IMG/VR virus record: IMGVR_UViG_3300043418_000114
Coordinates: 186,001-250,000 of that record
Length of the DNA: 64,000 nt
Reading direction: 5' to 3' (one strand)
The position numbers and the translations under genes are program-made. Position 1 is the first letter of the stretch. Each line of letters opens with the position of its first letter. Positions 6,936 to 53,501 of the stretch are shown piece after piece. The notes beneath the pieces were generated by a model, which saw nothing but the letters and a program-made list of their open reading frames with translations, was not told the origin of the DNA and made no database searches.

Positions 6936-8458
6936 GCTTTCTTTGGGGTCTTCATCTGAGACAACATGTGTTCAGCGTACTTATGCATACACATCACTGG
7001 AATATTGTCCCAGTATTCTTCTAGATAAAATGGACAACTACCGATCCACTGATTTGTGTCAATGTAATGTTTCAGTTCACGTAAATCTTCATCCCGTGTA
7101 GGATCAAAAAGCCGACGATTACTGACCGCATTAAGTAGAGAATATCGCATGGTTAGCTATCCATTTCCATTGAGTTGTATTCTTTAACAACATCAAGTAC
7201 TTCTTCCTCTGTGTTACAGATAATTTTACAGTTCTTCCATTCACTGTCGTCATCGCGGCCGCCAACTTCGACCATCCAACCATTGTCGTAACGATTGATT
7301 GTAATTGATTCGTTTACTTTTGCTAGTTTGCCTAGTTTATTTGCCATTGTTACTTCTCCTTAAAACTTAATGATATCAAATAACTCAGAGTGAGTCAACT
7401 ATTTGTTTACCATTAACCTGGAATAGCACTCTCAGACATAAGAAGACGACCGTACTGTGCTTTTGCCATCTGCACAGCTTGATGGGGATTATCAGCACGA
7501 ATCATCACACGACCAAAGCCTGCACCAGGTTCGTCTTTGTATTTTACCATCACATAATATGTGTTCATTTTACAACTCCAGTTAAAGTGAATTTACCAAG
7601 TGCTTCTTTTGCGTCGAACAAGTTTTCAACATCATCTAAAATCTCGGCAGTCTGTTGAATGAGTTCAGTTCGTGCCATTCTGATCAATTCGATGGCATAC
7701 TGTGCATCATCATCGCTGATTGTAGCATACCAATTCTCAAATTGTTGAGGCGACAGTGACATGATAAACAAATAATTATCGCGGTCATGTTTGTTCATTA
7801 TACGACTCCAGCTTCCTTTGTGTAATCAAGATCGAGTTTGATGTGACCATATCCATTCTTTATCAGATTGGCAGTCACTCGTGAAGATGCCATTCGCTTC
7901 ATCCAAACAGTTGTATGGACACCTCATTTAGTTTCTCGACCAGTTACTCTAGTGCCGTTGATGTAAACAGCACCCAGATTGGTGACTTCTACGTTAACTC
8001 GTTTGGATCGCATTATGCAACCTCGTATGATTTGTTCCACTGGCCGATGTTCACATCAACATACCAGCCCACATCGAAGTAATCTGATTGAATGTCCGAG
8101 TTGTTGTGATTGCCGTTGTTCATAGCAGTCATGACTTCTTGCAAGAACGTCAATGCTTTGCCATCGAAGTGGTCGTGATACCAGTAAGGGTTAACTTGAA
8201 TAGAACCTTCTGCCTTACGGAAGTTTTGTGGCTCAGCCATGTAACGAGGAGTACGGCTTACAGTACTGTTAAAGTTATCGATAAAGTCGATAGAACCAGA
8301 CTTGATGTTCAACACCAGGGTAGAGTGATTACGAACAGCAAGAGTGCCTTTGACGTTGTACTTTTTCAAGATAGCCTTGACGACTGGTGCGATTTCTGCT
8401 TTGTGATCTTGAGACATGTAAGCCATTTTGTTTCTCCGGTTTGTTTGTTGATGAATGA

Positions 8459-8487
8459 ATTATATATCCAAATCCATTCGTCGTCAA
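8459..8487 (-). promoter_or_regulatory. sigma70-type early promoter (repeat family)
   Basis: TTGACG-N17-TATAAT, spacer containing AATGGATTTGG. Confidence 0.75.
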
Positions 8488-9365
8488 GTCAAAGTTAATT
8501 TAACTTCAACAACTTCCAGGTGGGCTGTTTTTTGAGTGTAAGTGTCACGAATGCCGTCAGCCATGTCAGGTCTGGTTGAATTAGCACATTGGTCAATATA
8601 TGCTTGAACATTGGGATGATATCGATCACCGTCAATAGTCCAAGCATTGTATTGCTGTCCGTTTTTCTCACCTTTGAACATGTTCTTGATAGCTTTTTCA
8701 GCATTGGCTCGTGAAACGAATTGTGCCGCACTTTGCATGTCCATGCTAAATGAACGGAAGTTTTGACCTGTACAAAATGCGCCAGTTTCTGTTTCACGAA
8801 TTACAAACATTTTTGTCCTTAGTTAAAAACTTGACCATCAGCACGAATTTGTGTGATGTTCTCAACATCGAACGTGCGAATCACAACTTTGTCAGACAAG
8901 CCACCTTGTTCGCCTTCGCTAGCTTCTTGGAGACCTTGAATGCTAGATGCAGGAACAACATTCCCGTCAAGAGTGAAGTAAGATGCGCCAGCTTTCAGGA
9001 AGATCACTTCAAGATAGTGCTTAGTATCGCCGTTCTTAGTATGTTCAACGATTGGCATGTTCTCAAGACGAGTACCCCATTGACGAGGACCCAGTGTGAA
9101 GTTTGCAGGGTCTTTGCCTTCTGCAATCAAGCGACGATTAACCATATTCTCGTAGCCGTTGGAGTTTTTGTTTTGAAACACCATGACGTTAGCACCAGTC
9201 ATGAACTTCTGAACACGACCTTGATGTGGGTTAGACTTACCGCCAGTAAGTTTAGGAACAGTAACAGTGTCGATAGTTACGAAAGAAGCGCCATTAACGT
9301 TTGCGATGGCGTTGAGAACTTGAGCGTATTTCATTTTTAACTCCGTTTTGTGTGTTGATGGATGA

Positions 9366-36273: not shown

Positions 36274-37695
36274 TTACGACAAGTCGTAACGTGTCTTCAT
36301 CACTGTCTTCAACATGACGGCTTCTGGTGTGAAGTCTTCCAAGTCGTTAGACAATACAGAAGTTGCTAGTGCTGGGCTAAAGCCTGACACTAGTGCAGTA
36401 CCACTCTTATCGAATGACACTGGTGTGTTACCGTAACTTGCGTTCAAGTTCCAGAAGACAACTTTTGGAAGTGCGTAGCCTGCGGCTTCGTACTTACGTG
36501 CGATCATTTGCATCGCGGTGTCGTCATGCTTAACACATTGGTTAAATTGCATGTCTGAGAAGATAACAAGAGTTTCAGGCATTTCTGCTTGTGGAACACT
36601 GTTTTCTGTCGCAGTCTTCAGGATCTTTTCAAACGCCTTGTGAAGGTCTGTACTCATATCCCAGTTAGACTTGACCATTTGGTCAATCTTTTGGTTGATG
36701 TTACCCTTTAGGTGCATCAATTCTGGCTTGCTTGAGAAGGTCAAGAAGGTATCTTTGAACTTACCCTTGTTCTTATCAGCAAAGTACAAACCTAGGCTAA
36801 CAGCAACTTCCATGCAAGACAGGTTGCTCTTAGAGCCATGACCACCTGCTGGACAAGACATTGAACCAGAAACGTCAACCAGAGGAAGAACGTTTGCATC
36901 GCCAACGTAGTTAGGCATTGCTTCCCATTGCTTTTGGATCAAGTCAGTTTCAGTCTTGTTAAACTGCATCCAACCACCAATACGACCCTTCAGTACGTCA
37001 TATGGGAACACTGCGCCTGCGTTAACCTTAACACCAGCTTCGCCCTTAACGAGCTTAGTTACATATTCAGCGTATGTAGTACCATGACGGCCAAACGCTT
37101 TCTTGTAACGTGCATGTGCCACTGAAGGAACATGTGAGTAGTTGATGTTATCCCAATTTTGGGCACACATTTGTGTTTCAACAACATTAGTAAGGCCGAC
37201 TAGGCTCTTACGATATTGTTTAGGGGTCATTCCGAAGAATTGACGGATTTCACGTGCTACTTCACCTTTACGTGGAGTCCACTTAGCCGCAAGACCGTTA
37301 CCTGCACGTAGTGCATCGCCGAGCATAGTGTATGCCTTGGCCTTCACAGGCTGAGTCTTAAACACTAGCAAGTCGTCGTAACGACCCAATTCTGGAATCT
37401 TAGCCATCAAACGCATTGCGTCTTCTGGGTTAGTCTTTTCCAAGTGAACGAGGATGTCTCGGAAGACTTGACGTTCACCTGAACCACCACGTGCATCACG
37501 TGCCCATTGAGCGATACGCAATGCAAGATCAGAGTTCTCTACATAAGCCGCTGTGAAAGCCGGCACGATGTTTTTACCACGGCTTGCACCGATGTTGTAA
37601 AACAAATCAACACATGCGTTAGCACTTGATTTGCGAGCCTTCATACCATTGGTGGTACGAGTTGATTGATTCTTAACTGCTTCTGCGAATTGCAT
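36274..37695 (-). CDS. DUF2828-like TROVE/Ro-related protein with C-terminal vWA (MIDAS) domain
   Basis: 'ARD.RGG.GER', 'G.YDDL', 'AAKW.PR', DVSGS MIDAS, 'SDMQF', 'VFWNL', 'VSGFS'. Confidence 0.8.
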   Translation of the reverse strand: MQFAEAVKNQSTRTTNGMKARKSSANACVDLFYNIGASRGKNIVPAFTAAYVENSDLALRIAQWARDARGGSGERQVFRDILVHLEKTNPEDAMRLMAKIPELGRYDDLLVFKTQPVKAKAYTMLGDALRAGNGLAAKWTPRKGEVAREIRQFFGMTPKQYRKSLVGLTNVVETQMCAQNWDNINYSHVPSVAHARYKKAFGRHGTTYAEYVTKLVKGEAGVKVNAGAVFPYDVLKGRIGGWMQFNKTETDLIQKQWEAMPNYVGDANVLPLVDVSGSMSCPAGGHGSKSNLSCMEVAVSLGLYFADKNKGKFKDTFLTFSSKPELMHLKGNINQKIDQMVKSNWDMSTDLHKAFEKILKTATENSVPQAEMPETLVIFSDMQFNQCVKHDDTAMQMIARKYEAAGYALPKVVFWNLNASYGNTPVSFDKSGTALVSGFSPALATSVLSNDLEDFTPEAVMLKTVMKTRYDLS

Positions 37696-37722: not shown

Positions 37723-37786
37723 AACAGGATGCGCTTTTAGTTTCATCTATGAATTGAAATTTTAAAGTTTGCTGAATGCATCCTAA
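37723..37786 (-). ncRNA. CAGCA-scaffold RNA copy 1
   Basis: TAGGATGC-ATT-CAGCA...hairpin...GCATCCTG; promoter at 37793-37821. Confidence 0.8.
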
Positions 37787-37838: not shown

Positions 37839-37992
37839 AAACAGGATCGTTGTTGACTGCTTTTTGAATAGGGCCATCACTCCTATTGCGATAGATGCAT
37901 TTCAATAACTACCTTCAAAGTCCGTAGACTCCAGTAGTTACCATGCGATCCATCAGTTCCAATAAAGTAAATTATTGCTGTACCGATCCTAA
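37839..37992 (-). ncRNA. CAGCA-scaffold RNA copy 2 (multi-stem insert)
   Basis: TAGGATCG-GTA-CAGCA...CGATCCTG. Confidence 0.75.
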
Positions 37993-37997
37993 AAATA

Positions 37998-38250
37998 AAC
38001 GGGATGTTTGAACGTAGTTTATTTTATTGTCTGGTTGAGTCTAACTCACCTTTGCAGGACTTACGTTCCTCAACCATATCAACAATTCATGTTGACTATC
38101 TAGTAATTGAGTCTGCTACTAGCAACATAGAATGTCTTTCCATTCTGTCGTCTATTCCCTGAATGCTTAGTTGCCTAAGAGTATTGCTACTGTCTCCCGA
38201 CCACCTTCTATAGCTGATAGTTTGATTTTTAAATGCTGAACACATCCCAG
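37998..38250 (-). ncRNA. CAGCA-scaffold RNA copy 3 (about 250 nt)
   Basis: TGGGATGT-GTT-CAGCA...ACATCCCG. Confidence 0.7.
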
Positions 38251-38307: not shown

Positions 38308-39441
38308 CTATCGTAAATTAATTTTTACGTTAGGGTCTAATGTGATGCTAGACCAATTCTTGTTGAAATTGCCCCATATATCTTTCTCATTCTTGTAATC
38401 AGAAAGCAATGATAGCAATTGTGGATTGAATCGCTCAACTATCTTACGTTGAATAAGACCTGTTGTGGAATTCAGGGTGATATCCTCTACTGACATTCTA
38501 TGAATCGTTTGAGGGATTCGTATGTCTGCGAAAGGACTAAAAGTCATGTTGTTGTCAATGTGCCAATACTGATGATCATAAAAAATTGTTGAGTATAAAA
38601 ACTTCATCAACTGTTCTTGGTCGTAGTATTCTTCCATTGAATCTTTGTACTTGGCTACAACATTGGGACGCTTCAAAAACCAATAAAGATAATCAGTTTC
38701 TTTAGCTAGTTCGTCAATGTGTTTGCCTTGATAGTTTGCCAATGCGTTGATTGCTTCGCCGTCACGGTACTGATATGTCTCTGCATAGAAGCCAGTTGCA
38801 TACCAATTTAATTCCGTAAATGCACTTGATACATCATATCCCCAGTGTTTACTGGATACAAAGTCTACCAAGTCACTATCGTACTCTCTAACTCTGCCCA
38901 AAAACTTATGTAACGTATCGTCACCTTGTTTAGGCACATATGCTGTTAGAGTATAGTCTTTTGTGTAGCTGTCTAGTACAGCCCATGTTGTTAGGGTATC
39001 CAGTCCTGCTGAATACAACACATTCATGCGTTCAATATTATTGTACTTGTAGAAGTTTCGTGTGTTTTCTAACAATATATCGCCGATGATAATCGACGAC
39101 TCTTCCAATGACAGTAGGGTATCATTGGGAATTTTAGGTTCATTGTATGTAACAATGCCGTAGCCTTCAGTGGCTAGGTTTGTTTGTTCACCATTGCGTT
39201 CATATAATGGAAAACCTCTGAGAACTGGGTGATACACTTTTTCGTCATGTATCACGCACCATTTCCCAGCTGGCTGATAGCCATCAAGTATTTCTAGTAG
39301 CGTATCTGCTAGAGTACAATCTACGCTATAACCCTTATACCAGATGTTATCTTTTTGTTTCCAGCCGCCATCTAAAAACAGGCGATCTGAAACTTTGTTC
39401 ATCGCCTGTATTGGACAATTGGATCCGATGTAGAAAAACAT
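38308..39441 (-). CDS. Asparagine-synthase-like (PP-loop) protein
   Basis: 'VLYSAGLD' PP-loop-like motif and 'SPF.D'. Confidence 0.5.
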   Translation of the reverse strand: MFFYIGSNCPIQAMNKVSDRLFLDGGWKQKDNIWYKGYSVDCTLADTLLEILDGYQPAGKWCVIHDEKVYHPVLRGFPLYERNGEQTNLATEGYGIVTYNEPKIPNDTLLSLEESSIIIGDILLENTRNFYKYNNIERMNVLYSAGLDTLTTWAVLDSYTKDYTLTAYVPKQGDDTLHKFLGRVREYDSDLVDFVSSKHWGYDVSSAFTELNWYATGFYAETYQYRDGEAINALANYQGKHIDELAKETDYLYWFLKRPNVVAKYKDSMEEYYDQEQLMKFLYSTIFYDHQYWHIDNNMTFSPFADIRIPQTIHRMSVEDITLNSTTGLIQRKIVERFNPQLLSLLSDYKNEKDIWGNFNKNWSSITLDPNVKINLR

Positions 39442-39665
39442 TATCGCTTGTTGCCGATGCGCTTTAGATAATCACGGCCGACTAGGCCCTTTTCGATTTC
39501 TTGCAATGCAGTAACAAGATGGCCTGCTTTTGTTGCTAGTTTTGGTCGATGACCACGGGATAATTCACGAGTACGTTGACTTGCGATTAGAATCAAATCA
39601 TATCGATTGCCAACTGCATTAACTGCATCTTCGCTAGTATAGCGAACTCTACTTTCTGTCGTCAT
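39441..39665 (-). CDS. rpoZ: RNA polymerase omega subunit
   Basis: 'T.EDAV..VGNRYDLILIASQR.REL..G..P.......VTALQEI..G'. Confidence 0.88.
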   Translation of the reverse strand: MTTESRVRYTSEDAVNAVGNRYDLILIASQRTRELSRGHRPKLATKAGHLVTALQEIEKGLVGRDYLKRIGNKR

Positions 39666-40937: not shown

Positions 40938-41118
40938 AAAGGCTATCAGAGGCTTGCCATCGCCCTTAGGTTATACTGATATTACTCGTTGAAATATACC
41001 GAAGTATAGAGTTGGATTCAACAAGACCCTACTACTCACCTAAACTCATGTAGTCTGTAACGCATCATCATGAAGGGTCCAGCGACCTCTATCGTTACAG
41101 CATCTGGTTACATTCTTT

Positions 41119-41200
41119 CTATACTGAAACACACTGACTCTCCAGTATTTCTACTTTCGCCGAGTTTGACCGCGTAGTCGTGCAATGTGTTTTAGTATAG
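41119..41200 (-). repeat. Long-stem element (family 2)
   Basis: CTATACTAAAACACATTG...CAGTGTGTTTCAGTATAG. Confidence 0.65.
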
Positions 41201-42079
41201 TGGAGCACTGAGAATACATGCTTACCGAGTAACACCTCAGACATTATTACAATCCTTGCGAGACTGCTTTCTTCTGACTTCCACTGCAACCTCTTGCGAG
41301 TATCACAGTCTGTTACCAACATCGCCGTTTTAAGTCAGGCATTAGACTTGACGCTGTATGCTATTCTACGCTTTCTATCCCGTTGACCTTTAGAGCCATT
41401 CACTACCGCTAAGTAGTTACGAAACTTCCTGCATAAACAGATTTCACCTTGCGAGTTACGTCTGACTGGATTATCTTGCGACTCCAGTATTAGATGCTTT
41501 TCACATACAACCGAGACAGACTTTGCTTTTTTAATCGATAGAAGGGATCGAACCTTCAGCCGACTGCTTGAAAATGCAGTTGATCTACCATTGATCTATA
41601 TCAACCTACTGTGATGTGCTGTCTCAGTTGCTTCATAATCTTTTGGACTACAAAATACAACACGCCACGTACCTTTTGTCTCGCGGACTACTCAGTCGTC
41701 TTTCACGATTAATGTCGGGTCTCGGCTTTCGCGTACCTCCATCAACCATTCAAACTGCATTACAACTCTTAGATGCGACTCCTCGAATCATAACACTACC
41801 CTTTCTCATACCAATTAACTGGACTGGTTTTGTCGTGAGGTCAGCACCACCTGTTACTCTCTAATGACTTGCGTTACCCTCGATATTATCTCAGGCGCTT
41901 AAGCCACTAATTCTTTCCACAACTTCCAGCGTCATTGTTATCACCACCGGTCTTATCAGTGATGAAACCCTCGCGGGTTTGAGCAGGCTTGCTTAGATGA
42001 ACTATTTCTAGCGCGGGTCTGTAGGAGACTACCGCTTTGGGCCGATCACTCGGCTTATTCTAATGAGGCTAAGCCCCCA
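41201..42079 (-). ncRNA. GOLLD-like giant structured RNA with an embedded tRNA-Glu-like domain
   Basis: About 880 nt without a credible ORF; many GCAA/GNRA-capped stems; ends GCATGTATTCTCAGTGCTCCA; tRNA-cluster context; cloverleaf at 41533-41605. Confidence 0.65.
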
Positions 42080-42083
42080 TAAA

Positions 42084-42200
42084 TTCTTATACTCGCATAC
42101 ACTTGCAATATTGAAATTGCCTACCGGAAGGATATCTCACATCCAGCTGTGTCCGCTCACATCCGTATGGCCTATACGTTTATGTATGCGAGTATAAGAA
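42084..42200 (-). repeat. Long-stem element (family 2-like)
   Basis: 17-bp perfect stem TTCTTATACTCGCATAC / GTATGCGAGTATAAGAA. Confidence 0.6.
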
Positions 42201-42204
42201 CTAC

Positions 42205-42309
42205 TTTCTTAACATTGTTGAACATACTAGTGCATTTCCAAATTATGCTACTCCTCATCAGGGATGGAATCGAACCAACATCCCTAATACATTCAACAAT
42301 GCTAAGAAA
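42205..42309 (-). ncRNA. YrlA-topology tRNA-mimic RNA
   Basis: About 25-bp stem enclosing T loop TTCGATT, a short closed acceptor hairpin, then D arm TAGCATAATTTGGAAATGC. Confidence 0.6.
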
Positions 42310-42326
42310 ATTCTTAGCAATAATTT

Positions 42327-42394
42327 TTTAAAGAACATCACTGATTTCTCAGTGTCAATACAAGTATTGTATAAGGTTTTTAATTCACTGTCAA
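42327..42394 (-). promoter_or_regulatory. sigma70 promoter with boxB-like hairpin and boxA-like element
   Basis: TTGACA-N17-TACAAT; CACTGA-GAAA-TCAGTG; TGTTCTTTAAAA. Confidence 0.7.
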
Positions 42395-42424
42395 CAACTT
42401 TTTTAAGATTGTTAACCATTTTAT

Positions 42425-42500
42425 TGGAGCGGGAGGCGGGAGTCGAACCCGTCTATTTCAGTTTGGAAGACTAACGTGTAACCACAAACACTTCACCCGC
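42425..42500 (-). tRNA. tRNA-Gly(TCC)
   Basis: Loop CTTCCAA; U73; CCA. Confidence 0.88.
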
Positions 42501-42512
42501 ATAAATAACTTT

Positions 42513-42865
42513 ATGCATATCTATGACGCTATCACAAACTCTGGATTACACATCCACTTGTCCATGAGCGCCGATAATACATTTTACATTCTAGTATACG
42601 ACATTGATAACTTCATGTTAACTATGAAATTTTTCAACAATGTAGATACTGCAATGCAATTTATCCATTCACTATGAGTAGCCCAACAGATTACGAAATC
42701 TTATATAGATTAAACACTAGTCCATATGCAGAGACTAAGAGTTGGGTACTGCCTAATACATTCAAAGCAATGTTCTCAAATGAGAACTTACCTGAATTTG
42801 TTATTGATGAACTATTAAAGAAACAGACGTTTAAATTAGACGATCAGTTTCCTCAATACAAATAA
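42513..42865 (+). other. Two small coupled CDS (42513-42677, 42674-42865) antisense to the tRNA array
   Basis: ATAAATA upstream; ATGA overlap. Confidence 0.5.
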
Positions 42866-42867
42866 TC

Positions 42868-42943
42868 TGGCATCCCGGGAGGGATTTGAACCCCCAACTT
42901 ACGGTTTTGGAGACCGTTGCTCTGCCAATTGAACTACCGAGAT
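42868..42943 (-). tRNA. tRNA-Trp(CCA)
   Basis: Loop CTCCAAA; G73; CCA. Confidence 0.9.
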
Positions 42944-42949
42944 ATATAA

Positions 42950-43010
42950 AACAGGATGCTTATTTTTCAATTAAAAGTTGAATTATAAGATGTTGCTGGA
43001 CGCATCCTAA
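42950..43010 (-). ncRNA. CAGCA-scaffold RNA copy 5, with a bare Lys(TTT) anticodon stem-loop
   Basis: TAGGATGC-GTC-CAGCA...TTCAA-CTTTTAA-TTGAA...GCATCCTG. Confidence 0.85.
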
Positions 43011-43014
43011 AACT

Positions 43015-43104
43015 TGGCGGAAACGGTGAGATTCGAACTCACGGACCCTTTGAAAGATCGCCGGTTTTCAAGACCGGAGCCATAGACCACTCGACCACGT
43101 TTCC
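43015..43104 (-). tRNA. tRNA-Ser(TGA)
   Basis: Loop CTTGAAA; long V arm; G73; CCA. Confidence 0.92.
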
Positions 43105-43117
43105 ATTAAAATATTTA

Positions 43118-43202
43118 TACCATATGTAAACACACTAGCGTTTTTCACTAAACTACAACTTGACTGGACTTGACCAGTGACTCTATTGTGCTTGCATATG
43201 GT
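43118..43202 (-). repeat. Long-stem element (family 2)
   Basis: ACCATATGCAAGCACAATAG...CTAGTGTGTTTACATATGGT. Confidence 0.65.
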
Positions 43203-43315
43203 GACAGTTTAGTCCGATAACTGCCAAGAGTTGTGGTGATCCGGCACACCTTTTATGTATAAGTTGACTACAAGAGGCTTATACACTAGGGCCTTCACGT
43301 TGCCCTATTTTTTAA

Positions 43316-43442
43316 TACCATATAGAAACACACTGTCGTTTCTCTTTCCAGTCTAGACAACCTCGCTTACGAAGCACGATTATATCACAGGATTACGCAT
43401 CCTGCTCGTCACTGTACTCAAGCAATGTGTTTTTATATGGTA
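43316..43442 (-). repeat. Long-stem element (family 2)
   Basis: TACCATATAAAAACACATTG...CAGTGTGTTTCTATATGGTA; overlaps the CCA of tRNA-Lys. Confidence 0.65.
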
Positions 43443-43512
43443 GGGGCACAGGGAATCGAACCCTGATAGACCGGTTAAAAGCCGGATATTCTAGCCGTTG
43501 AATTATACCCCC
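43438..43512 (-). tRNA. tRNA-Lys(TTT)
   Basis: Loop CTTTTAA; CCA. Confidence 0.9.
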
Positions 43513-43515
43513 ATA

Positions 43516-43590
43516 TGGTCCCAGTGCTGAGATTCGAACTCAGTTCTCTCGGCTTAAGAGGCCGGACTTCACCTTCAAAGTTTCTCTGGG
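43516..43590 (-). tRNA. tRNA-Lys(CTT)
   Basis: Loop CTCTTAA; CCA; imperfect acceptor stem. Confidence 0.75.
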
Positions 43591-43689
43591 ATGGATCGTA
43601 AGAAATTTTCTTTTACGTGCCATCTGAGACCATACGGGGGTCAAAGATGACACTATCGTTTACCTGAACGTTTCATGTCATTTACCTTT

Positions 43690-44046
43690 TTAAGATTTAA
43701 GTGCTTTTAAAATATTATCCCAAGATTCAGTTGGATTATGACCTTGATCTAGCAAGGCAACATAAGTCTTAACTGCATCTTCTGGAATCTTGAAATAGAT
43801 GTTTGCGTAGGTGCAGTCGAATGAATCATCTTCATCACGAACGTACCATGGATGACTTGACATTTCATCAAATACATCTTCATAGTCTTCACGATTGCCA
43901 CCACCATTACGTGTGTGAACAACAATGTGACCATCTTCTACATAAACATCACGAAAGCGACCGAAGTCACCTTTTGTTTTATCTAACAGACTCAGGAGTT
44001 GATCCGAGTTAGGGTTAGTGCCAAACATCATGTTATACAAACTCAT
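43690..44046 (-). CDS. Hypothetical phage protein
   Basis: AAGGAG SD; 'GRFRD...HTRNGGGNREDY...DD.FDCTYA'. Confidence 0.65.
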   Translation of the reverse strand: MSLYNMMFGTNPNSDQLLSLLDKTKGDFGRFRDVYVEDGHIVVHTRNGGGNREDYEDVFDEMSSHPWYVRDEDDSFDCTYANIYFKIPEDAVKTYVALLDQGHNPTESWDNILKALKS

Positions 44047-44144
44047 TTCATTCTCCTTTGTTAATTTGTGGAAGTTCCGATAGCACCCATCGTCACTTAC
44101 AACCGTTGAGTAGCCTTGCATCAAAACAGTGCTACTATTTGCTC

Positions 44145-44219
44145 TGGAGGACAGGATAGGAATCAAACCTACCTAGAACGGATTTGCAATCCGCCACATA
44201 ATCGCTCTGTCACCTGTCC
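44145..44219 (-). tRNA. tRNA-Cys(GCA)
   Basis: Loop TTGCAAA; U73; CCA. Confidence 0.82.
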
Positions 44220-44228
44220 ATATTTTGT

Positions 44229-44316
44229 TGGCGGAGCATGTAGGAATCGAACCTACTCACCTCTTTCGAAATGATGGATTAGCAATCCATTGCCTTAACC
44301 GGTCGGCCAATGCTCC
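44229..44316 (-). tRNA. tRNA-Ser(GCT)
   Basis: Loop TTGCTAA; long V arm; CCA. Confidence 0.9.
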
Positions 44317-44331
44317 GTAAAATATCTGATT

Positions 44332-44500
44332 AAAAATCATAAAATAGTGTATTCAGCTGGCAGACTGCAACAAGATACTATCCTCTAATATATTAGTATC
44401 ACAGTGATATTAAGTTCCGGACCCTAATATCACCAAAGTCTGGCAAATAAGATATATAAATTCAAAGTTTATTAAATGAATACACTAATTTATGATTTTT
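44332..44500 (-). repeat. Long inverted-repeat-bounded element
   Basis: AAAAATCATAAATTAGTGTATTCA...TGAATACACTATTTTATGATTTTT. Confidence 0.6.
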
Positions 44501-44576
44501 GGTGGGCCCAACAGGACTCGAACCTGTGGCCAAGGAATTATGAGTTCCCTGCTCTAACCAACTGAGCTATAGGCCC
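44500..44576 (-). tRNA. tRNA(CAT), Ile2-like or Met
   Basis: GGGCCTA acceptor; loop CTCATAA; CCA. Confidence 0.85.
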
Positions 44577-44586
44577 ATAATCTAAA

Positions 44587-44766
44587 ACCATATTATAATA
44601 CACTCCCAATGCATGTCAAGCACTGTAACTTCATGGTACATCTTGAACCACAGTTTCGAACCTGTGAAATGTAGCACTATCTAGTATCAACTCTTTCGAA
44701 TTCAAAACATACTAGACCCGGCAAGCTGGGGCCTCTATATATGACAAGAGTATACTATAATATGGT
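44587..44766 (-). repeat. Long-stem element (family 2)
   Basis: ACCATATTATAGTATACTC...GAGTGTATTATAATATGGT; overlaps the CCA of tRNA-Leu. Confidence 0.6.
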
Positions 44767-44849
44767 GCGGGTGGCCGGAATCGAACCGGCACGGTGTCTC
44801 CACCGACGGATTTTAAGTCCGTTACGTCTACCTATTTCATCACACCCGC
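44763..44849 (-). tRNA. tRNA-Leu(TAA)
   Basis: Loop CTTAAAA; long V arm; CCA. Confidence 0.92.
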
Positions 44850-44856
44850 ATATTAC

Positions 44857-44933
44857 TGGCGCCTCGTAGGGGACTCGAACCCCTGGCCTCTTGCGTGACA
44901 GGCAAGCGATCTAACCAACTGAGCTAACGAAGC
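44857..44933 (-). tRNA. tRNA-Asp(GTC)
   Basis: Loop CTGTCAC; G73; CCA. Confidence 0.9.
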
Positions 44934-44938
44934 GTAAA

Positions 44939-45090
44939 TGGTGGGCTATCGCGGATTCAAACCACGCAACAACTCTATGTTGTAGAGTTAGGATTTCCAA
45001 TCACTCTAAAGCCTATAAATTCATCACCGTTGACGTTTTACCATTGAAAGACACGGTGCCATCTGTCTCAGTCGCATTACCTATCACCCC
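44939..45090 (-). ncRNA. About 150-nt RNA with a tRNA-like 3' end
   Basis: T-like arm CGTGG-TTTGAAT-CCGCG, then ATAGCCC-A-CCA; probable 5' partner GGGTGAT. Confidence 0.45.
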
Positions 45091-45227: not shown

Positions 45228-45656
45228 TTATTTGTTTTTGCCACACCAAGTGTCAGTCTGTGAATGACAATTGGGACAGAGTAATCTTAAGTTTTTAAAC
45301 TTGTGATTGTGATTATCGCCGTCTATGTGATCTAAATGTAGAGAAATTTCTTTTCCCATCCATTCTTCTAATCCACACGACGAGCATTTGTTATCTAATA
45401 TTTTTTCTTTTAACAAACGCTTTTTCAGTTTTAGTGTTTGATATGTAGGATGCAATCCTTCTAGAATTTCATTCAACTCTATCTTCTTTGCACCACCACC
45501 TATCTTAAAATCTAAACCTAATCTTTTTGCTCTACGCCAAACTGTAACATCTGGCACATTAAAATAATGTGCTAACTTGCTCAAGACTGGCGTAATGTTA
45601 TACTGTTCTATCAATTCAGTATCTGTAAACTTTTCTGTACTATGTTTTTGTTTCAT
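45228..45656 (-). CDS. HNH endonuclease
   Basis: CxxC...LHLDHIDGD..N....NLRLLCPNCH. Confidence 0.88.
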   Translation of the reverse strand: MKQKHSTEKFTDTELIEQYNITPVLSKLAHYFNVPDVTVWRRAKRLGLDFKIGGGAKKIELNEILEGLHPTYQTLKLKKRLLKEKILDNKCSSCGLEEWMGKEISLHLDHIDGDNHNHKFKNLRLLCPNCHSQTDTWCGKNK

Positions 45657-47310: not shown

Positions 47311-47871
47311 CTACGAAAGCAAGATTCTAGAATGCTTTGGCACACCTGCCATCAAGTATTCCATTTGGTCTGCAAGAATTGTTCGTTGTTGCAGAATCAT
47401 GTTTTCATAGTGGTTAGGTTCATAAGGAACATAAAGTAGTTCCATACGTGCTTCTTTCAAAGACTTATGACCCTTCTTAGAGTTACATTCCTTACATGCA
47501 GTAACTACGTTCATCCAAGTGTTGTCGCCGCCATGGTACCGAGGTACAATGTGGTCACGGCTTAGATTGTGATAGTTAGGGAAATGTCCACCACAGTATG
47601 CACAAACATACCGGTCACGACCAAACAATGTCTTGTTAGTCAATGCAACATGTGCGTGACGATGTGGGTTATAACCATGACCCTTGATAGCAATAATAGA
47701 AGGAGATTCTAGGTAGCTTAGTGATCCGTCACGTTGTACGCCACCACGATACTTCGCAACAATTTCACCCATAGACCATGCTACGGAGTCAGTTGCGTGA
47801 TATGCAATTGCGTCATCGTTTGAGATCCATTGCCGGGGAACTCCTGAAATATCTAGTGCTAGAACAGCCAT
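47311..47871 (-). CDS. HNH endonuclease (McrA-like)
   Basis: RD..VCAYCG...DHIVP...GG..TW.NVVTACKECN. Confidence 0.88.
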   Translation of the reverse strand: MAVLALDISGVPRQWISNDDAIAYHATDSVAWSMGEIVAKYRGGVQRDGSLSYLESPSIIAIKGHGYNPHRHAHVALTNKTLFGRDRYVCAYCGGHFPNYHNLSRDHIVPRYHGGDNTWMNVVTACKECNSKKGHKSLKEARMELLYVPYEPNHYENMILQQRTILADQMEYLMAGVPKHSRILLS

Positions 47872-48482: not shown

Positions 48483-48572
48483 TGGCAGAGAGTAAGGGAT
48501 TCGAACCCTTGTGCCGCGCTAGCGACCATCACCTTTCCAAGATGCGCCCTTAAGCCTCTCGGGCAACTCTCT
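48483..48572 (-). tRNA. tRNA-Ser(GGA)
   Basis: Loop TTGGAAA; long V arm; CCA. Confidence 0.85.
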
Positions 48573-48577
48573 ATATT

Positions 48578-48676
48578 TGGTGCCTCTGGCAGGACTCGAA
48601 CCTGCACACTGTGGCTTATCTAGCCACTGCTTTGGGGAGGTATAAGCTCCCTTCTTTACCATTAAGCTACAGAGGC
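48578..48676 (-). tRNA. tRNA with TAT anticodon (Ile AUA) and about 29-nt variable region
   Basis: GGGAG-CTTATAC-CTCCC; V hairpin GTGGCT-AGATA-AGCCAC; A73; CCA. Confidence 0.75.
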
Positions 48677-50474: not shown

Positions 50475-50557
50475 TGTGTGTTGTAGGATTCGAACCTACA
50501 TCAGGAGGTTTTTAGGCCTCTTGTAATGATGCCCTAAACATTTATACGAAACACACA
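50475..50557 (-). pseudogene. Degenerate tRNA-like element
   Basis: T arm GTAGG-TTCGAAT-CCTAC; 8-nt loop CCTAAAAA; no CCA. Confidence 0.5.
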
Positions 50558-51908: not shown

Positions 51909-52022
51909 AACAGGATACATTCTTGACGAATGCTCTACCAATTGAGCTAATCTCGCATGAAGCGAAATGTTGGAATCGAACCAACGACACATCGTTTGAT
52001 GTAGTTTGCTGTATGTATCCTA
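51909..52022 (-). ncRNA. CAGCA-scaffold RNA copy 6, with a permuted T-acceptor-D tRNA mimic
   Basis: TAGGATAC-ATA-CAGCA, tetraloop hairpin, GTTGG-TTCGATT-CCAAC, closed acceptor, TAGCTCAATTGGTAGAGC, GTATCCTG. Confidence 0.85.
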
Positions 52023-52510: not shown

Positions 52511-52571
52511 AACAGGATGCGTTTTTGCTTTTTACCAATAAAAGTTTTTTTAATTGCTGAATGCATCCTAA
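52511..52571 (-). ncRNA. CAGCA-scaffold RNA copy 7
   Basis: TAGGATGC-ATT-CAGCA...CTTTT-ATTGGTA-AAAAG...GCATCCTG. Confidence 0.8.
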
Positions 52572-53399: not shown

Positions 53400-53501
53400 A
53401 ACAGGATAGTTGTTTTGCAGGGGGAATTGAACCCCCAAGGTTTGATTAGAAGTCAAATTGTGAACCGTTCACATGCGTATTGTTTGCTGTAACTATCCTA
53501 A
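53400..53501 (-). ncRNA. CAGCA-scaffold RNA copy 8, enclosing D-like, Arg(TCT) anticodon and T arms
   Basis: TAGGATAG-TTA-CAGCA...TTTGA-CTTCTAA-TCAAA, GGGGG-TTCAATT-CCCCC...CTATCCTG. Confidence 0.85.

What the first reader, a model, noticed from the sequence alone, without database searches (positions are those of the whole stretch)
42950..43010. Minimal 60-nt RNA displaying only a tRNA-Lys(UUU) anticodon stem-loop
The cargo is a perfect 5-bp stem with the canonical Lys loop CUUUUAA. tRNA-Lys(UUU) is the established target of PrrC and of PARIS AriB. Similar minimal copies carry a UUCAUAG loop (37723) and an AUUGGUA loop (52511; anticodon identity ambiguous). A decoy or sensor role is inference.
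Basis: partly seen in the sequence, partly recalled or inferred. Interest (0 to 1): 0.75.

Follow-up and report, generated by a model that had tools for sequence, protein, structure and literature searches.

The report
Phage Y-like RNA showing an anticodon arm
The 56-base element is a real small RNA gene of a jumbo phage: it belongs to a widespread phage family of Y-RNA-like molecules, partners of a Ro60-like protein, and the only tRNA part it displays is a lysine-type anticodon hairpin, which may let it compete with real tRNAs for enzymes that read or cut anticodon loops.

Summary
On the minus strand at window 43008..42953, between tRNA-Ser and tRNA-Trp, lies a 56-nt element. It has a 7-bp terminal stem (AGGAUGC/GCAUCCU), a single-stranded CAGCAA motif, a 5-bp hairpin with loop CUUUUAA, and a 3' GUU tail.

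It is one of seven copies of one scaffold in this 364-kb freshwater phage. All copies are on the tRNA strand, and three sit just 5' of a 473-aa DUF2828 protein whose predicted fold is Ro60 (TROVE plus vWA).

The scaffold recurs in over 100 viral contigs, always on the strand of that gene. It also occurs in cultured phages: E. coli phage SUSP2, Synechococcus phage BUCT-ZZ01 and a mycobacteriophage.

- One sibling copy scores as Rfam YrlA (below threshold).
- Another encloses an acceptor-less tRNA.
- The minimal copies align to that tRNA-like copy minus its D and T arms, so the hairpin is an anticodon-arm homologue.

Among 80 distinct minimal homologues, 32 carry a 5-bp stem with a CUNNNAA loop (0.11 expected from shuffles). 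The triplets are mostly UUU, UCU and UGU.

So this is a Y-RNA-like tRNA mimic reduced to an anticodon arm: a new variant of a known kind. Its role as a decoy or competitor for anticodon-directed enzymes is plausible but untested.

The parts
42953..43008 (-). The 56-nt Y-RNA-like small RNA of the finding: terminal stem, CAGCAA motif, anticodon-arm-like hairpin.
   Evidence: Sequence; fold; scaffold shared with five exact-pattern copies in the genome and with over 140 closed copies in viral contigs.
43002..43008 (-). 5' strand of the terminal stem (AGGAUGC). AGGAU is invariant in the family as sampled; positions 6-7 covary with the 3' strand.
   Evidence: pair 6: GC 11, AU 9, CG 5; all 25 paired.
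42993..42998 (-). Single-stranded CAGCAA motif directly 3' of the stem. It is the presumed recognition site for the Ro60-like protein, an analogue of the GNCGAA / GGUCCGA motif of known Y RNAs.
   Evidence: Present in copies from SUSP2, BUCT-ZZ01 and mycobacteriophage Clautastrophe, which were found without imposing AGGAU. Unpaired in the MFE structure. Binding itself is inferred.
42966..42982 (-). Anticodon-arm mimic: 5-bp stem UUCAA/UUGAA and 7-nt loop CUUUUAA (C32 U33 U34 U35 U36 A37 A38). The UUU triplet is at 42975-42973.
   Evidence: Compensatory changes in the stem among 25 homologues. The loop is identical to that of the commonest real tRNA-Lys(UUU) genes in these phages. It aligns with the anticodon arm of the tRNA-like copies.
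42953..42959 (-). 3' strand of the terminal stem (GCAUCCU).
42950..42952 (-). Conserved 3' tail GUU (the RNA ends ...CCUGUU).
   Evidence: G at +1 in 143/143, U 93% and U 89% at +2 and +3 of closed copies, none of them imposed by the search.
43009..43014 (-). Spacer A-G-UUUU between the encoded CCA end of tRNA-Ser and the element. The family consensus upstream is CCA-R-UUUU.
   Evidence: positions -3..-1 were imposed by the search pattern; -4 to -8 were not.
43015..43104 (-). tRNA-Ser(UGA), immediately 5' of the element in the same transcription direction.
42868..42943 (-). tRNA-Trp(CCA), 9 nt 3' of the element.
53403..53499 (-). Sibling copy, 97 nt. The scaffold encloses an acceptor-less tRNA (D-like arm, anticodon arm UUUGA-CUUCUAA-UCAAA, T arm).
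   Evidence: The inner 53476..53416 scores 35.8 bits on Rfam tRNA (threshold 29).
52514..52569 (-). Sibling copy, 56 nt, 'UGG-loop' subfamily (CUUUU-AUUGGUA-AAAAG).
   Evidence: Best Rfam hit is Dicty_Class_I_RNA at 34.5 bits.
51912..52021 (-). Sibling copy, 110 nt, YrlA type: V hairpin, T arm, closed acceptor-like hairpin, D arm.
   Evidence: Rfam YrlA 31.3 bits, E 3.6e-5, below the threshold of 69.
37843..37990 (-). Sibling copy, 148 nt, with a large structured cargo of unknown kind.
   Evidence: z = -4.7. No Rfam family.
37726..37784 (-). Sibling copy, 59 nt, 'CAUA-loop' subfamily. It ends 30 nt before the start codon of the Ro60-like gene.
   Evidence: The same arrangement occurs in L025, L030 and L114.
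38001..38248 (-). Seventh, divergent copy (~248 nt): GGGAUGU...UUCAGCAU...ACAUCCC-GUUUAU. It is the first of three tandem copies 5' of the Ro60-like gene.
36274..37695 (-). Ro60-like protein (473 aa; Pfam DUF2828 + DUF7788; TROVE-like HEAT ring plus a vWA domain with a conserved DxSGS MIDAS motif). It is the presumed protein partner of all copies.
   Evidence: Pfam. AF2 model, pLDDT 76. The top 13 PDB hits are all Ro60/TROVE proteins. The top six Swiss-Prot hits are telomerase p80 and Ro60. Synteny.
43438..43512 (-). The phage's genuine tRNA-Lys(UUU), for comparison: same loop CUUUUAA, but a G+C-rich CCGG/CCGG anticodon stem.

Best explanation
The element is a small non-coding RNA gene of a phage-specific Y-RNA-like family.

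1. It is transcribed with the tRNA array and is probably released by the cuts that mature the flanking tRNAs (inferred).
2. Its terminal stem (5' AG...CUGUU 3') and the adjacent single-stranded CAGCAA form a constant module. This module most likely docks on the phage's Ro60-like DUF2828 protein, as Y RNAs dock on Ro60 (inferred from synteny and fold, not shown).
3. The variable module of this copy is a tRNA reduced to its anticodon arm: a 5-bp stem and the loop C32-U33-UUU-A37-A38 of ANN-decoding tRNAs, here of Lys(UUU) type (shown by comparison with homologues).
4. The RNP would therefore present a tRNA anticodon arm that cannot be charged or used in translation.
5. The most likely use is to compete with real tRNAs for a factor that reads the anticodon loop: a host anticodon nuclease such as a PrrC- or AriB-like enzyme, or an anticodon-loop-modifying enzyme. 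It would act as a stable, protein-protected competitor (inferred).

My confidence by step: real conserved RNA of this family about 0.9; Y-RNA-like partner of the Ro60-like protein about 0.75; genuine anticodon-arm mimicry about 0.7; decoy or competitor for anticodon-directed enzymes about 0.3.
For: Scaffold:
- There are seven copies in the genome, all on the tRNA strand.
- 144 of 188 pattern hits close in viral contigs, against 1 of 120 in cellular genomes.
- The stem covaries and a G follows the 3' strand in 143 of 143 cases.

Link to Ro60:
- The adjacent ORF is DUF2828/DUF7788.
- Its model's best PDB and Swiss-Prot matches are Ro60/TROVE proteins over the full length.
- In 32 loci holding the full gene, 60 elements lie on its strand and none on the other. 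In 25 of the 32, an element lies within 400 nt upstream.
- The same scaffold sits next to the gene in SUSP2, BUCT-ZZ01 and a mycobacteriophage where the gene is annotated 'Ro-like'.
- Sibling copies score as Rfam YrlA at 31-49 bits, below the threshold.

Anticodon-arm mimicry:
- 32 of 80 distinct minimal copies have a 5-bp stem with a CUNNNAA loop. The shuffle mean is 0.11 (maximum 2) and the genome background is 0.9-1.0%.
- The stem shows compensatory changes: 45 double-sided cells against 12.5 in shuffles, with 0 of 500 shuffles reaching the observed value. The 26-44 pair is never Watson-Crick.
- The hairpin aligns with the anticodon arm of 97-nt copies that pass the Rfam tRNA threshold.
- The loops equal those of real phage tRNAs with the same triplet.

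Expression:
- All four freshwater metatranscriptomes have a depth peak over 42888-43061 while the adjacent coding bins are near zero.
- Contigs from RNA runs cover the element or a variant of it.

Precedent:
- PrrC reads cues in the anticodon stem-loop (PMC1484252).
- AriB cuts Lys(UUU), Thr(UGU) and Asn(GUU) (PMC12409363).
- Competitive inhibition of an anticodon nuclease has been suggested for YrlA (PMC7790460).
- A Ro60-like protein of coliphage Bas63, encoded next to its tRNA genes, counters a defence system (PMC11482910).
Against: - No binding, processing or function has been measured.
- The protein-RNA complex job was not folded and gives no evidence.
- The motif is CAGCAA, not the GNCGAA or GGUCCGA motif of established Y RNAs. 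The 56-nt copy does not hit Rfam YrlA at all.
- Other minimal subfamilies carry loops that are not anticodon-like (UGG, CAUA and others). The scaffold therefore does not require an anticodon arm.
- The triplet varies mainly at position 35, which could be an unconstrained position rather than an 'identity'.
- This copy has UAAUUG where AriB targets have UAAUCA.
- The phage has no recognisable RtcB, Rnl1 or Rnl2, so there is no classical RNA-repair context.
- The host and its defences are unknown.
- RNA-run evidence comes from assembled contigs, and the bin overlaps two tRNAs, which can attract other organisms' reads.
- The 25 aligned homologues were selected for having the hairpin, so their 100% pairing is partly by construction.
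Confidence: 0.6

Rival explanations
1. Adaptor rather than decoy. The anticodon arm tethers the Ro60-like RNP to a tRNA-handling protein (a modification enzyme for t6A37 or U34, a processing nuclease, or PNPase). The RNP would then act on tRNAs or other structured RNAs, for example as quality control of the phage's ~45 tRNAs and its GOLLD RNA. This follows the way Y RNA tethers Rsr to PNPase.
For: - Known Y RNAs work as tethers and gates (PMC4201824, section 10; PMC12135203).
- The invariant loop positions C32, U33, U36, A37 and A38 are, from my own knowledge of the t6A literature, the determinants of t6A37 formation.
- One genome carries several copies showing different tRNA parts (ASL, T/D/acceptor, near-whole tRNA).
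- The system lies inside a huge tRNA array.
Against: No partner enzyme has been identified, and no PNPase or modification gene was examined here. This reading is hard to tell apart from the decoy model by sequence alone.
Confidence: 0.2
2. Evolutionary relic. The hairpin descends from a tRNA anticodon arm, but today it only serves as a stable spacer or as a second contact for the Ro60-like protein. Its anticodon-like loop has no anticodon-specific role.
For: - Minimal copies are deletion derivatives of tRNA-like copies.
- Other subfamilies have unrelated loops on the same scaffold.
- Only one loop position varies.
Against: - Five of the seven loop positions are kept across nine or more different stem sequences and divergent scaffolds.
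- Copies with different triplets coexist in one genome: UUU and UCU in the window and in L002, UCU and UGU in L030. A plain spacer would be expected to drift.
Confidence: 0.12
3. Sensor. Cleavage of the displayed anticodon loop by an activated host nuclease changes the RNP (for example, releases the Ro60-like protein or yields a signalling fragment) and switches on a phage response.
For: This is only an analogy to tRNA halves activating RtcR (PMC7790460).
Against: No effector or regulator is linked to the locus. No RtcB or RtcR homologue was found. The terminal stem would hold the halves together after a cut.
Confidence: 0.05
4. Not a functional RNA: a decayed tRNA gene, an inter-tRNA processing spacer, a terminator, or the inverted-repeat ends of a small mobile element with a GTTTT target duplication.
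For: - It lies between two tRNAs.
- It has inverted-repeat ends flanked by U-rich runs.
- A collapsed AGGAUGCGUAAUCCU palindrome occurs nearby at 43389-43403.
Against: - The scaffold is conserved in hundreds of phages with covarying stems, a strict strand bias and linkage to one gene.
- No terminator- or promoter-like site lies at the element.
- The variable parts of the 'inverted repeat' differ between copies and covary within each copy. That fits an RNA helix, not a transposase site.
- The pattern closes in 1 of 120 hits in cellular genomes.
Confidence: 0.03

Closest known systems
Bacterial and phage YrlA-type Y RNAs (Chen et al. 2014, PMC4201824; Rfam RF02553)
   Same: - The 5' and 3' ends form a stem.
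- A conserved short motif follows the 5' strand.
- They are encoded next to, and on the strand of, a Ro60-type gene.
- A second module mimics tRNA.
- Several Y RNAs occur per locus.
- Mycobacteriophage genes annotated 'Ro-like' are homologues (33-35% identity) of the window's protein. One of them (Clautastrophe) is followed by a YrlA-like RNA (39.3 bits, below the threshold of 69) that carries the same CAGCAA motif.
   Different: - The motif is (U/A)CAGCAA with 5' AG and 3' CUG(U), not GNCGAA(N)G.
- The protein falls in Pfam DUF2828/DUF7788 and is not detected by the TROVE model.
- The tRNA-like module of this copy is the anticodon arm alone. That is the one arm YrlA lacks.
- Scores are below Rfam's threshold, or there is no hit at all.
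Thermus phage phiLo Ro60 with Yrl1/Yrl2 (PMC12135203; PDB 9KOP, 9L5Y)
   Same: - A phage-encoded Ro60-fold protein has Y-like RNAs encoded just upstream.
- It is the best structural match of the window's protein (E 1e-9, TM 0.52-0.54).
- It has been proposed as part of an anti-defence strategy.
   Different: - phiLo's RNAs have the CGAA bulge motif and no described anticodon arm.
- Sequence identity to the window's protein is only ~16% over the structural alignment.
Dictyostelium Class I RNAs (Rfam RF01414; Kjellin et al. 2021, PMC7919456)
   Same: - Length is 42-65 nt.
- The 5' end is (A)AG and the 3' end is CUGU, with that G and C paired.
- A short covarying terminal stem.
- A conserved motif ...UUACAGCAA directly after the 5' strand.
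- An A/U-rich variable middle.
- All three minimal copies of the window have RF01414 as their best Rfam match: 19.2, 26.1 and 34.5 bits.
   Different: - All scores are below the threshold of 41.5.
- The Class I genes are eukaryotic, with a DUSE promoter.
- Their known partner is the RRM protein Rnp1A.
- No Ro60-like partner is known, and I could not check whether Dictyostelia have a DUF2828 gene.
- The resemblance may be convergence or a compositional bias.
Phage tRNAs that bypass tRNA-cleaving defences (T5 tRNA-Lys/Thr/Asn against PARIS AriB, PMC12409363; T4 repair of PrrC-cut tRNA-Lys, PMC1484252)
   Same: - They concern the same tRNA species (Lys UUU, Thr UGU) and the same region (the anticodon stem-loop).
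- They are phage-encoded and sit in tRNA clusters.
   Different: - Those are complete, chargeable tRNAs that replace the cut ones. This RNA has no acceptor end, D arm or T arm and could act only by binding.
- This copy lacks the UAAUC|A context that AriB cuts.
Bas63 gp130, a Ro60-like protein next to the tRNA genes that counters the 'ppl' defence (bioRxiv, PMC11482910)
   Same: - A Ro60-fold protein in a Felix O1-like coliphage is encoded beside the tRNA block.
- Its authors guessed that some 'tRNA genes' there are Y RNAs.
- I found four scaffold copies next to the homologous gene of the related phage SUSP2.
   Different: - I did not examine Bas63 itself.
- ppl is described there as an ATPase-PHP system acting on DNA, not as a tRNA nuclease.
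- No RNA partner has been shown.

Membership tests
Y RNA / YrlA-like RNA (Rfam RF02553) | The 5' and 3' ends pair to form a terminal stem. | tested here: met
   7-bp stem in the MFE and centroid structures. Covarying pairs 6 and 7 in 25 homologues.
Y RNA / YrlA-like RNA (Rfam RF02553) | Encoded close to, and on the same strand as, a Ro60 orthologue (Chen et al. used 4 kb and same strand). | tested here: inconclusive
   This copy lies about 5.3 kb from the gene, on the same strand. Three sibling copies lie within 560 nt. Across 32 loci, 60 elements are on the gene's strand and none on the other, and 25 of 32 loci have one within 400 nt upstream. The gene has the Ro60 fold, but it belongs to Pfam DUF2828 and is not detected by the TROVE model.
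Y RNA / YrlA-like RNA (Rfam RF02553) | Conserved Ro60-binding motif near the 5' end: GNCGAA(N)G in bacteria, GGUCCGA in animals. | tested here: not met
   The motif here is GUC-CAGCAA; the family consensus is U(A/U)CAGCAA. It holds the same position as the known motif, but the sequence differs.
Y RNA / YrlA-like RNA (Rfam RF02553) | tRNA-like domain with T arm, D arm and a closed acceptor-like stem. | tested here: not met
   This copy has only an anticodon-arm-like hairpin. The sibling 52021..51912 has all three arms.
Y RNA / YrlA-like RNA (Rfam RF02553) | Score at or above Rfam's gathering threshold (69 bits). | tested here: not met
   No YrlA hit for this copy even at E <= 10. Siblings and relatives score 31.3, 39.3 and 48.9 bits.
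Y RNA / YrlA-like RNA (Rfam RF02553) | Physical association with the Ro60 protein. | not testable with these tools
   The complex-prediction job was not folded and gives no evidence. This needs RIP or EMSA.
tRNA (Rfam RF00005) | Cloverleaf with acceptor stem, D arm, anticodon arm and T arm. | tested here: not met
   Neither ARAGORN nor Rfam calls a tRNA at 42953-43008. [quoted passage not shown]
tRNA (Rfam RF00005) | Anticodon arm: 5-bp stem, 7-nt loop, U33, purine 37, non-Watson-Crick 26-44. | tested here: met
   UUCAA-CUUUUAA-UUGAA. A-A at the 26-44 position; this position is never Watson-Crick in the 25 homologues. The loop is identical to the loops of the commonest real tRNA-Lys(UUU) anticodon arms listed in related phage loci.
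Dictyostelium Class I RNA (Rfam RF01414) | 42-65 nt, a short terminal stem, 5' (A)AG and 3' CUGU. | tested here: met
   56 nt; 5' AG; 3' ...CCU-GUU. The features are as described in PMC7919456.
Dictyostelium Class I RNA (Rfam RF01414) | The 11-nt motif CCUUACAGCAA next to the 5' strand, and a score of at least 41.5 bits. | tested here: not met
   This copy has GUCCAGCAA, which shares only part of the motif, and scores 19.2 bits. Siblings score 26.1 and 34.5 bits.
Dictyostelium Class I RNA (Rfam RF01414) | Dictyostelid nuclear gene with the DUSE promoter about 60 nt upstream. | tested here: not met
   The gene lies in a phage tRNA array, 6 nt after a tRNA.
Substrate or competitor of the PARIS AriB nuclease | The sequence U36-A-A-U-C|A41 around the cleavage site (PMC12409363). 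| tested here: not met
   This copy reads UAAUUG. 9 of 25 homologues (stem UUUGA/UCAAA) read UAAUCA.
Substrate or competitor of the PrrC anticodon nuclease | Lys anticodon UUU in a canonical anticodon stem-loop. Base modifications also contribute (PMC1484252). | tested here: inconclusive
   The sequence cues are present. The modification state and any interaction cannot be tested here.

The most novel reading that the evidence does not exclude
Phages from mycobacteriophages to Felix O1-like coliphages and freshwater jumbo phages use one Ro60-like protein as a platform. On it they display interchangeable pieces of tRNA: anticodon arms of Lys, Arg and Thr type, a UGG loop that could pair with the CCA end, T/D/acceptor modules, and near-whole tRNAs. 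These would act as protected RNA decoys that blunt tRNA-targeting bacterial immunity. The same AG-stem-ACAGCAA...CUGU scaffold in Dictyostelium Class I RNAs would mean that those long-enigmatic RNAs are Y RNAs of a Ro60-like protein.
Probability: 0.2. Interest if true: 0.9.

Novelty: new variant of a known kind. Interest (0 to 1): 0.68.

Why it matters
Y RNAs that mimic tRNA have been known since 2014, but the purpose of the mimicry is still open. This family offers a natural dissection of the question. The same protein-binding scaffold carries either a whole acceptor-less tRNA, the T/D/acceptor half, or the anticodon arm alone. The anticodon-like triplets match tRNAs that known defence nucleases cut (Lys UUU, Thr UGU).

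The protein family occurs in 709 cultured phage records. I found the scaffold next to it in an E. coli phage (SUSP2), a Synechococcus phage and a mycobacteriophage. The competitor hypothesis can therefore be tested directly in laboratory strains.

It would also add an RNA-protein decoy to the list of phage counter-defences. It explains many unannotated gaps in phage tRNA arrays. And it gives a first lead on the partner of the Dictyostelium Class I RNAs.

Tried and rejected
- Rfam at gathering thresholds found no family for the element. At permissive thresholds only a weak Dicty_Class_I_RNA match appeared.
- A sequence search of the Ro60-like protein against the PDB found nothing. The link came only from the predicted fold.
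- Complex prediction with the protein and the 56-nt RNA was not folded. It gives no evidence either way.
- DNA similarity to cultured phages over 41000-45000 gave only tRNA matches.
- RtcB, Rnl2, Rnl1 and the canonical TROVE model found nothing in the 364-kb genome. The Rnl1 search also found nothing in the control genomes, so it says nothing.
- The genome-contig scan gave 119 loci, but only 1 of 120 pattern hits closes. These are chance matches and give no host clue.
- Literature searches for 'DUF2828' with 'Y RNA', and for Y RNA / anticodon / phage / mimic, found no description of this scaffold or of anticodon-arm-only Y RNAs.
- Avesson 2011 and Aspegren 2004 on the Class I RNA proteins are not held. 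The AlphaFold DB cluster search returned no organism names, and no Dictyostelium protein appeared among the Swiss-Prot matches. I therefore could not check for a Dictyostelium DUF2828 gene.
- The terminator or promoter reading is rejected: no such site lies at the element.
- The tRNA pseudogene and mobile-element readings are rejected on conservation, covariation and strand bias.
- In this copy the hairpin occupies positions 27-43, exactly as in tRNA numbering. Homologues place the hairpin one or two positions away (by my count of the sequences), so I treat this as coincidence.
Full report
**Setting.** The window is bases 186001-250000 of a single 364,247-bp virus record with direct terminal repeats, rated complete. 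It was assembled from a freshwater metagenome. Between about 39.7 and 54.9 kb it carries 45 or more tRNA genes, all on the minus strand, and a GOLLD RNA. The finding lies in the 71-nt gap between tRNA-Ser(UGA) (43015-43104) and tRNA-Trp(CCA) (42868-42943).

**The observation.**
- Read on the minus strand, 43008..42953 is a 56-nt unit.
- Its parts are AGGAUGC, GUC, CAGCAA, a 4-bp helix, an A-A/A-A internal loop, the hairpin UUCAA-CUUUUAA-UUGAA, and GCAUCCU.
- UUUU precedes it and GUUUUAU follows it.
- RNAfold returns this structure as both MFE and centroid. The energy is only modestly better than shuffles (z = -2.3). The case therefore rests on comparison, not on folding energy.

**A repeated scaffold.**
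- AGGAT-N5-CAGCAA occurs six times in the whole genome. All six are on the minus strand and in the tRNA region. Each is closed 49-141 nt downstream by the reverse complement of its own first seven bases, followed by GUU.
- The closing helices differ between copies (GC, AGUU, ACAU, CG extensions). That is the signature of an RNA stem.
- A seventh, divergent copy (GGGAUGU...ACAUCCC-GUUUAU, 38248..38001) heads a tandem of three copies just upstream of ORF 36274-37695.
- The cargo varies between copies:
  - three ~56-59-nt copies carry one hairpin;
  - a 97-nt copy has an interior that passes the Rfam tRNA threshold (35.8 bits), with the acceptor stem cut to 3 bp;
  - a 110-nt copy matches Rfam YrlA, below threshold (31.3 bits, E 3.6e-5), with a T arm, a closed acceptor-like hairpin and a D arm;
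  - two larger copies have cargo of unknown kind.

**The protein partner.**
- The ORF that follows the tandem copies (473 aa) matches Pfam DUF2828 and DUF7788, and weakly the Ro60 vWA domain.
- It has no sequence match in the PDB.
- An AlphaFold model built from 12 homologues (pLDDT 76) has Ro60/TROVE proteins as its 13 best PDB matches, over the full length. They are Thermus phage phiLo Ro60, D. radiodurans Rsr, and Xenopus and human Ro60.
- In Swiss-Prot its best matches are telomerase p80 and five Ro60 proteins.
- A DxSGS MIDAS motif is invariant.
- Homologues are very numerous: 6,996 hits among the 8,000 candidates scored. They occur in 709 cultured phage records, among them mycobacteriophages where the gene is annotated 'Ro-like RNA binding protein'.

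**Distribution and linkage.**
Many of them hold 2-5 copies.
- Of 188 pattern hits, 144 close properly. Together with the window's six copies these give 146 distinct sequences.
- The same pattern in bacterial and archaeal genomes gave 120 hits, of which one closes. That is the chance level.
- The base after the 3' strand is G in 143 of 143 cases, followed by U (93%) and U (89%). Upstream the consensus is CCA-R-UUUU, so the elements typically start a few bases after an encoded tRNA CCA end.
- The Ro60-like gene is present in 35 of the 119 partly fetched loci.
- In the 32 loci with a full gene, all 60 elements lie on its strand. In 25 of them an element lies within 400 nt upstream.
- Without imposing AGGAU, I found the same architecture (5' AG, stem, NN(N)CAGCA(A/U), cargo, stem, CUG) next to the gene in three cultured phages:
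  - Synechococcus phage BUCT-ZZ01 has three tandem copies, one with the loop CUUUUAC.
  - E. coli phage SUSP2 has four copies, one of YrlA type.
  - Mycobacteriophage Clautastrophe has GGACCCC-CA-CAGCAA...GGGGUCC, which scores 39.3 bits on Rfam YrlA.
- The scaffold is therefore the RNA partner class of this Ro60-like clade. Part of it, the mycobacteriophage YrlA RNAs, was already described (PMC4201824).

**Is the hairpin an anticodon arm?** Three lines say yes.

1. *Statistics.*
   - Among the 80 distinct copies of 75 nt or less, 56 have a hairpin with a 5-bp stem and a 7-nt loop (shuffle mean 7.8). Of these, 32 have the loop CUNNNAA (shuffle mean 0.11, maximum 2 in 500).
   - In the phage's own genome 0.9% of such hairpins have that loop, real tRNAs included, and 1.0% of those with AT-rich stems.
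   - U at loop position 2 occurs in 82% against 32%. A purine at position 6 occurs in 83% against 51%.
2. *Covariation.*
   - In 25 aligned copies every stem cell is paired, with up to five pair types per position.
   - 45 cells are changed on both sides, against 12.5 in shuffles (0 of 500 reach it). The covariation score is 0.418 against 0.105. Slid controls score at most 0.081.
   - The position flanking the stem (26-44) is never Watson-Crick, as in tRNA.
   - These 25 were chosen for having the hairpin, so the 100% pairing is partly by construction. The compensatory changes are not.
3. *Homology.*
   - The minimal copies align to the ~97-nt tRNA-like copies as the same molecule lacking the D and T arms, sometimes with an identical scaffold (L001 against L008).
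   - The hairpin falls column for column on the anticodon arm.

The loops equal those of the genuine tRNAs of these phages (CUUUUAA for UUU, CUUCUAA for UCU, CUUGUAA for UGU). The stems, however, are A+U-rich, unlike the G+C-rich stems of the phages' real Lys, Arg and Thr tRNAs.

**What 'Lys' means.**
- The triplets in the minimal copies are UUU (14), UCU (5) and UGU (5), plus single cases. The tRNA-like copies are mostly UCU.
- Positions 32, 33, 36, 37 and 38 are fixed, position 34 is nearly always U, and position 35 varies.
- Nearly all triplets are thus NNU, the class that reads ANN codons.
- Close relatives of the window's copy, with the same stem, carry UGU (L041, L028) or UUU (L064).
- One genome can hold two types: UUU plus UCU in the window, UCU plus UGU in L030.
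- This fits either diversification of specificity or one unconstrained position. I cannot decide between the two.

**Expression.**
- In four freshwater metatranscriptomes, assembled contigs give a depth peak over 42888-43061 (445, 126, 244 and 145). Neighbouring coding bins are at or near zero in three of the runs.
- A 153-nt RNA-run contig spans 42959-43110. Contigs with variant linker sequences show the homologous element of related phages in RNA runs at depths of 29-108.
- This supports transcription with the tRNA array. It does not define the ends, and the bin overlaps two tRNAs.

**Mechanism.**
- Shown: a conserved, structured, strand-specific RNA family linked to a gene with the Ro60 fold, and a cargo that is an anticodon-arm homologue with canonical loop features.
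- Inferred: release by tRNA processing, docking of the AG-stem-CAGCAA-CUGUU module on the Ro60-like protein, and presentation of the anticodon arm to a factor that recognises it.
- The literature makes a competitor role reasonable:
  - PrrC reads the anticodon stem-loop of tRNA-Lys (PMC1484252).
  - AriB cuts Lys(UUU), Thr(UGU) and Asn(GUU) in the anticodon stem (PMC12409363).
  - Hughes et al. suggested that YrlA may competitively inhibit an anticodon nuclease (PMC7790460).
  - A Ro60-like protein of coliphage Bas63, beside its tRNA genes, counters a defence system (PMC11482910).
- Against over-reading:
  - This copy lacks the AriB site context.
  - Other subfamilies display quite different loops.
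  - No RNA-repair ligase is present.
  - Nothing has been measured.
- I put the decoy or competitor role at about 0.3, a tether or adaptor role at about 0.2, and a relic hairpin at about 0.12.

**Comparison and novelty.**
- It works like a Y RNA and is best filed as a Y-RNA-like RNA of a divergent Ro60 clade.
- It does not meet the sequence-defined criteria of Rfam YrlA (motif, tRNA-like T/D/acceptor domain, score), and it is not a tRNA.
- New here are the scaffold definition, its breadth across phages, its modular cargo, and the reduction of that cargo to an anticodon arm. Literature searches found no description of any of these.
- Hence: a new variant of a known kind.

**An unexpected resemblance.**
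- All three minimal copies have the Dictyostelium Class I RNA model as their best Rfam match (19.2, 26.1 and 34.5 bits; threshold 41.5).
- The shared features are exactly those that define Class I RNAs: about 56 nt, 5' (A)AG, a short covarying stem, ...UUACAGCAA after the 5' strand, a variable A/U-rich middle, and 3' CUGU (PMC7919456).
- DUF2828 proteins also occur in eukaryotes.
- Whether this is homology, convergence on a similar protein, or composition is open.

Noticed in passing
window 52514-52569, 37726-37784, 42953-43008 (minus strand): All three minimal copies have Rfam Dicty_Class_I_RNA (RF01414) as their best match (34.5, 26.1 and 19.2 bits; threshold 41.5). They share its defining features: 5' AG, a short stem, UUACAGCAA-like motif, 3' CUGU, about 56 nt. 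Class I RNAs were reported as unique to Dictyostelia. They might be Y-like RNAs of a Ro60-like protein.
   Followed up: partly
window 52514-52569 (minus) and many viral loci (e.g. L043:2169-2224, L068, L094, L098): A second minimal subfamily has loops containing UGG (AUUGGUA, UAUGGAA, AUUGGUG, AUUGGCG...). UGGN could pair with the NCCA 3' end of tRNAs, as the T-box and RNase P do. This is speculation only.
   Followed up: no
window 37726-37784 (minus); L025:3256-3308, L030:3426-3482, L114: A third minimal subfamily has (C/U)AUA-containing loops. It holds a fixed place 28-34 nt upstream of the start codon of the Ro60-like gene. It could also act in cis on that gene's expression.
   Followed up: no
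window 38001-38248 (minus): A divergent seventh scaffold copy (GGGAUGU...UUCAGCAU...ACAUCCC), about 248 nt. Its interior resembles the ~226-nt class of L007 and related loci. Its cargo is unidentified.
   Followed up: partly
window 43389-43403: A 15-nt palindrome, AGGAUGCGUAAUCCU followed by GU on the minus strand. It equals the two ends of the scaffold with motif and cargo missing. It may be the scar of a deleted copy, inside a 333-nt ORF-free gap between tRNA-Ser and tRNA-Lys.
   Followed up: no
window 41205-41668 (minus): GOLLD RNA (203.5 bits) with an embedded tRNA-like unit that ARAGORN reads with a 4-base anticodon (41532-41606). Its region reaches contig depths of thousands in four freshwater metatranscriptomes, far above everything around it.
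   Followed up: partly
L240 (Escherichia phage SUSP2, NC_028935.2) 7717-7775, 7876-7932, 8332-8402, 8422-8543: Four unannotated scaffold copies (AGACC...CAGCAA...GGUCU-GG) lie in the tRNA block just after the Ro60-like gene of a Felix O1-like coliphage. One is of YrlA type. This is a tractable model. The related Bas63 gp130 is reported to counter the ppl defence.
   Followed up: partly
L242 (Mycobacterium phage Clautastrophe) 4005-4130 and 4137 onward: The YrlA-like RNA after the 'Ro-like' gene carries the same CAGCAA motif right after its 5' stem strand (GGACCCC-CA-CAGCAA). A second GGACGG-UA-ACAGCAA start follows at once. The motif thus unites G+C-rich and A+T-rich phages.
   Followed up: partly
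L239 (Synechococcus phage BUCT-ZZ01) 1728-2128: This cyanophage encodes a permuted tmRNA (Rfam tmRNA_permuted, 111.9 bits) about 4 kb upstream of its Ro60-like gene and three Y-like RNAs. The stretch carries no RNA-gene annotation in the record.
   Followed up: no
window 45228-45656, 47311-47871, 48483-48676, 50475-50556: HNH endonuclease ORFs are interspersed in the tRNA array. Two tRNA genes are unusually long (90 and 99 nt: Pro-UGG and Glu-CUC). One tRNA is found only by Rfam. These may be intron-containing or otherwise atypical tRNAs.
   Followed up: no
window 39441-39665 (minus): A 74-aa ORF matches RNA polymerase Rpb6/omega (E 2e-10) at the edge of the tRNA array. It is followed by a 377-aa ORF of unknown family, just upstream of the three tandem Y-like RNAs.
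   Followed up: no
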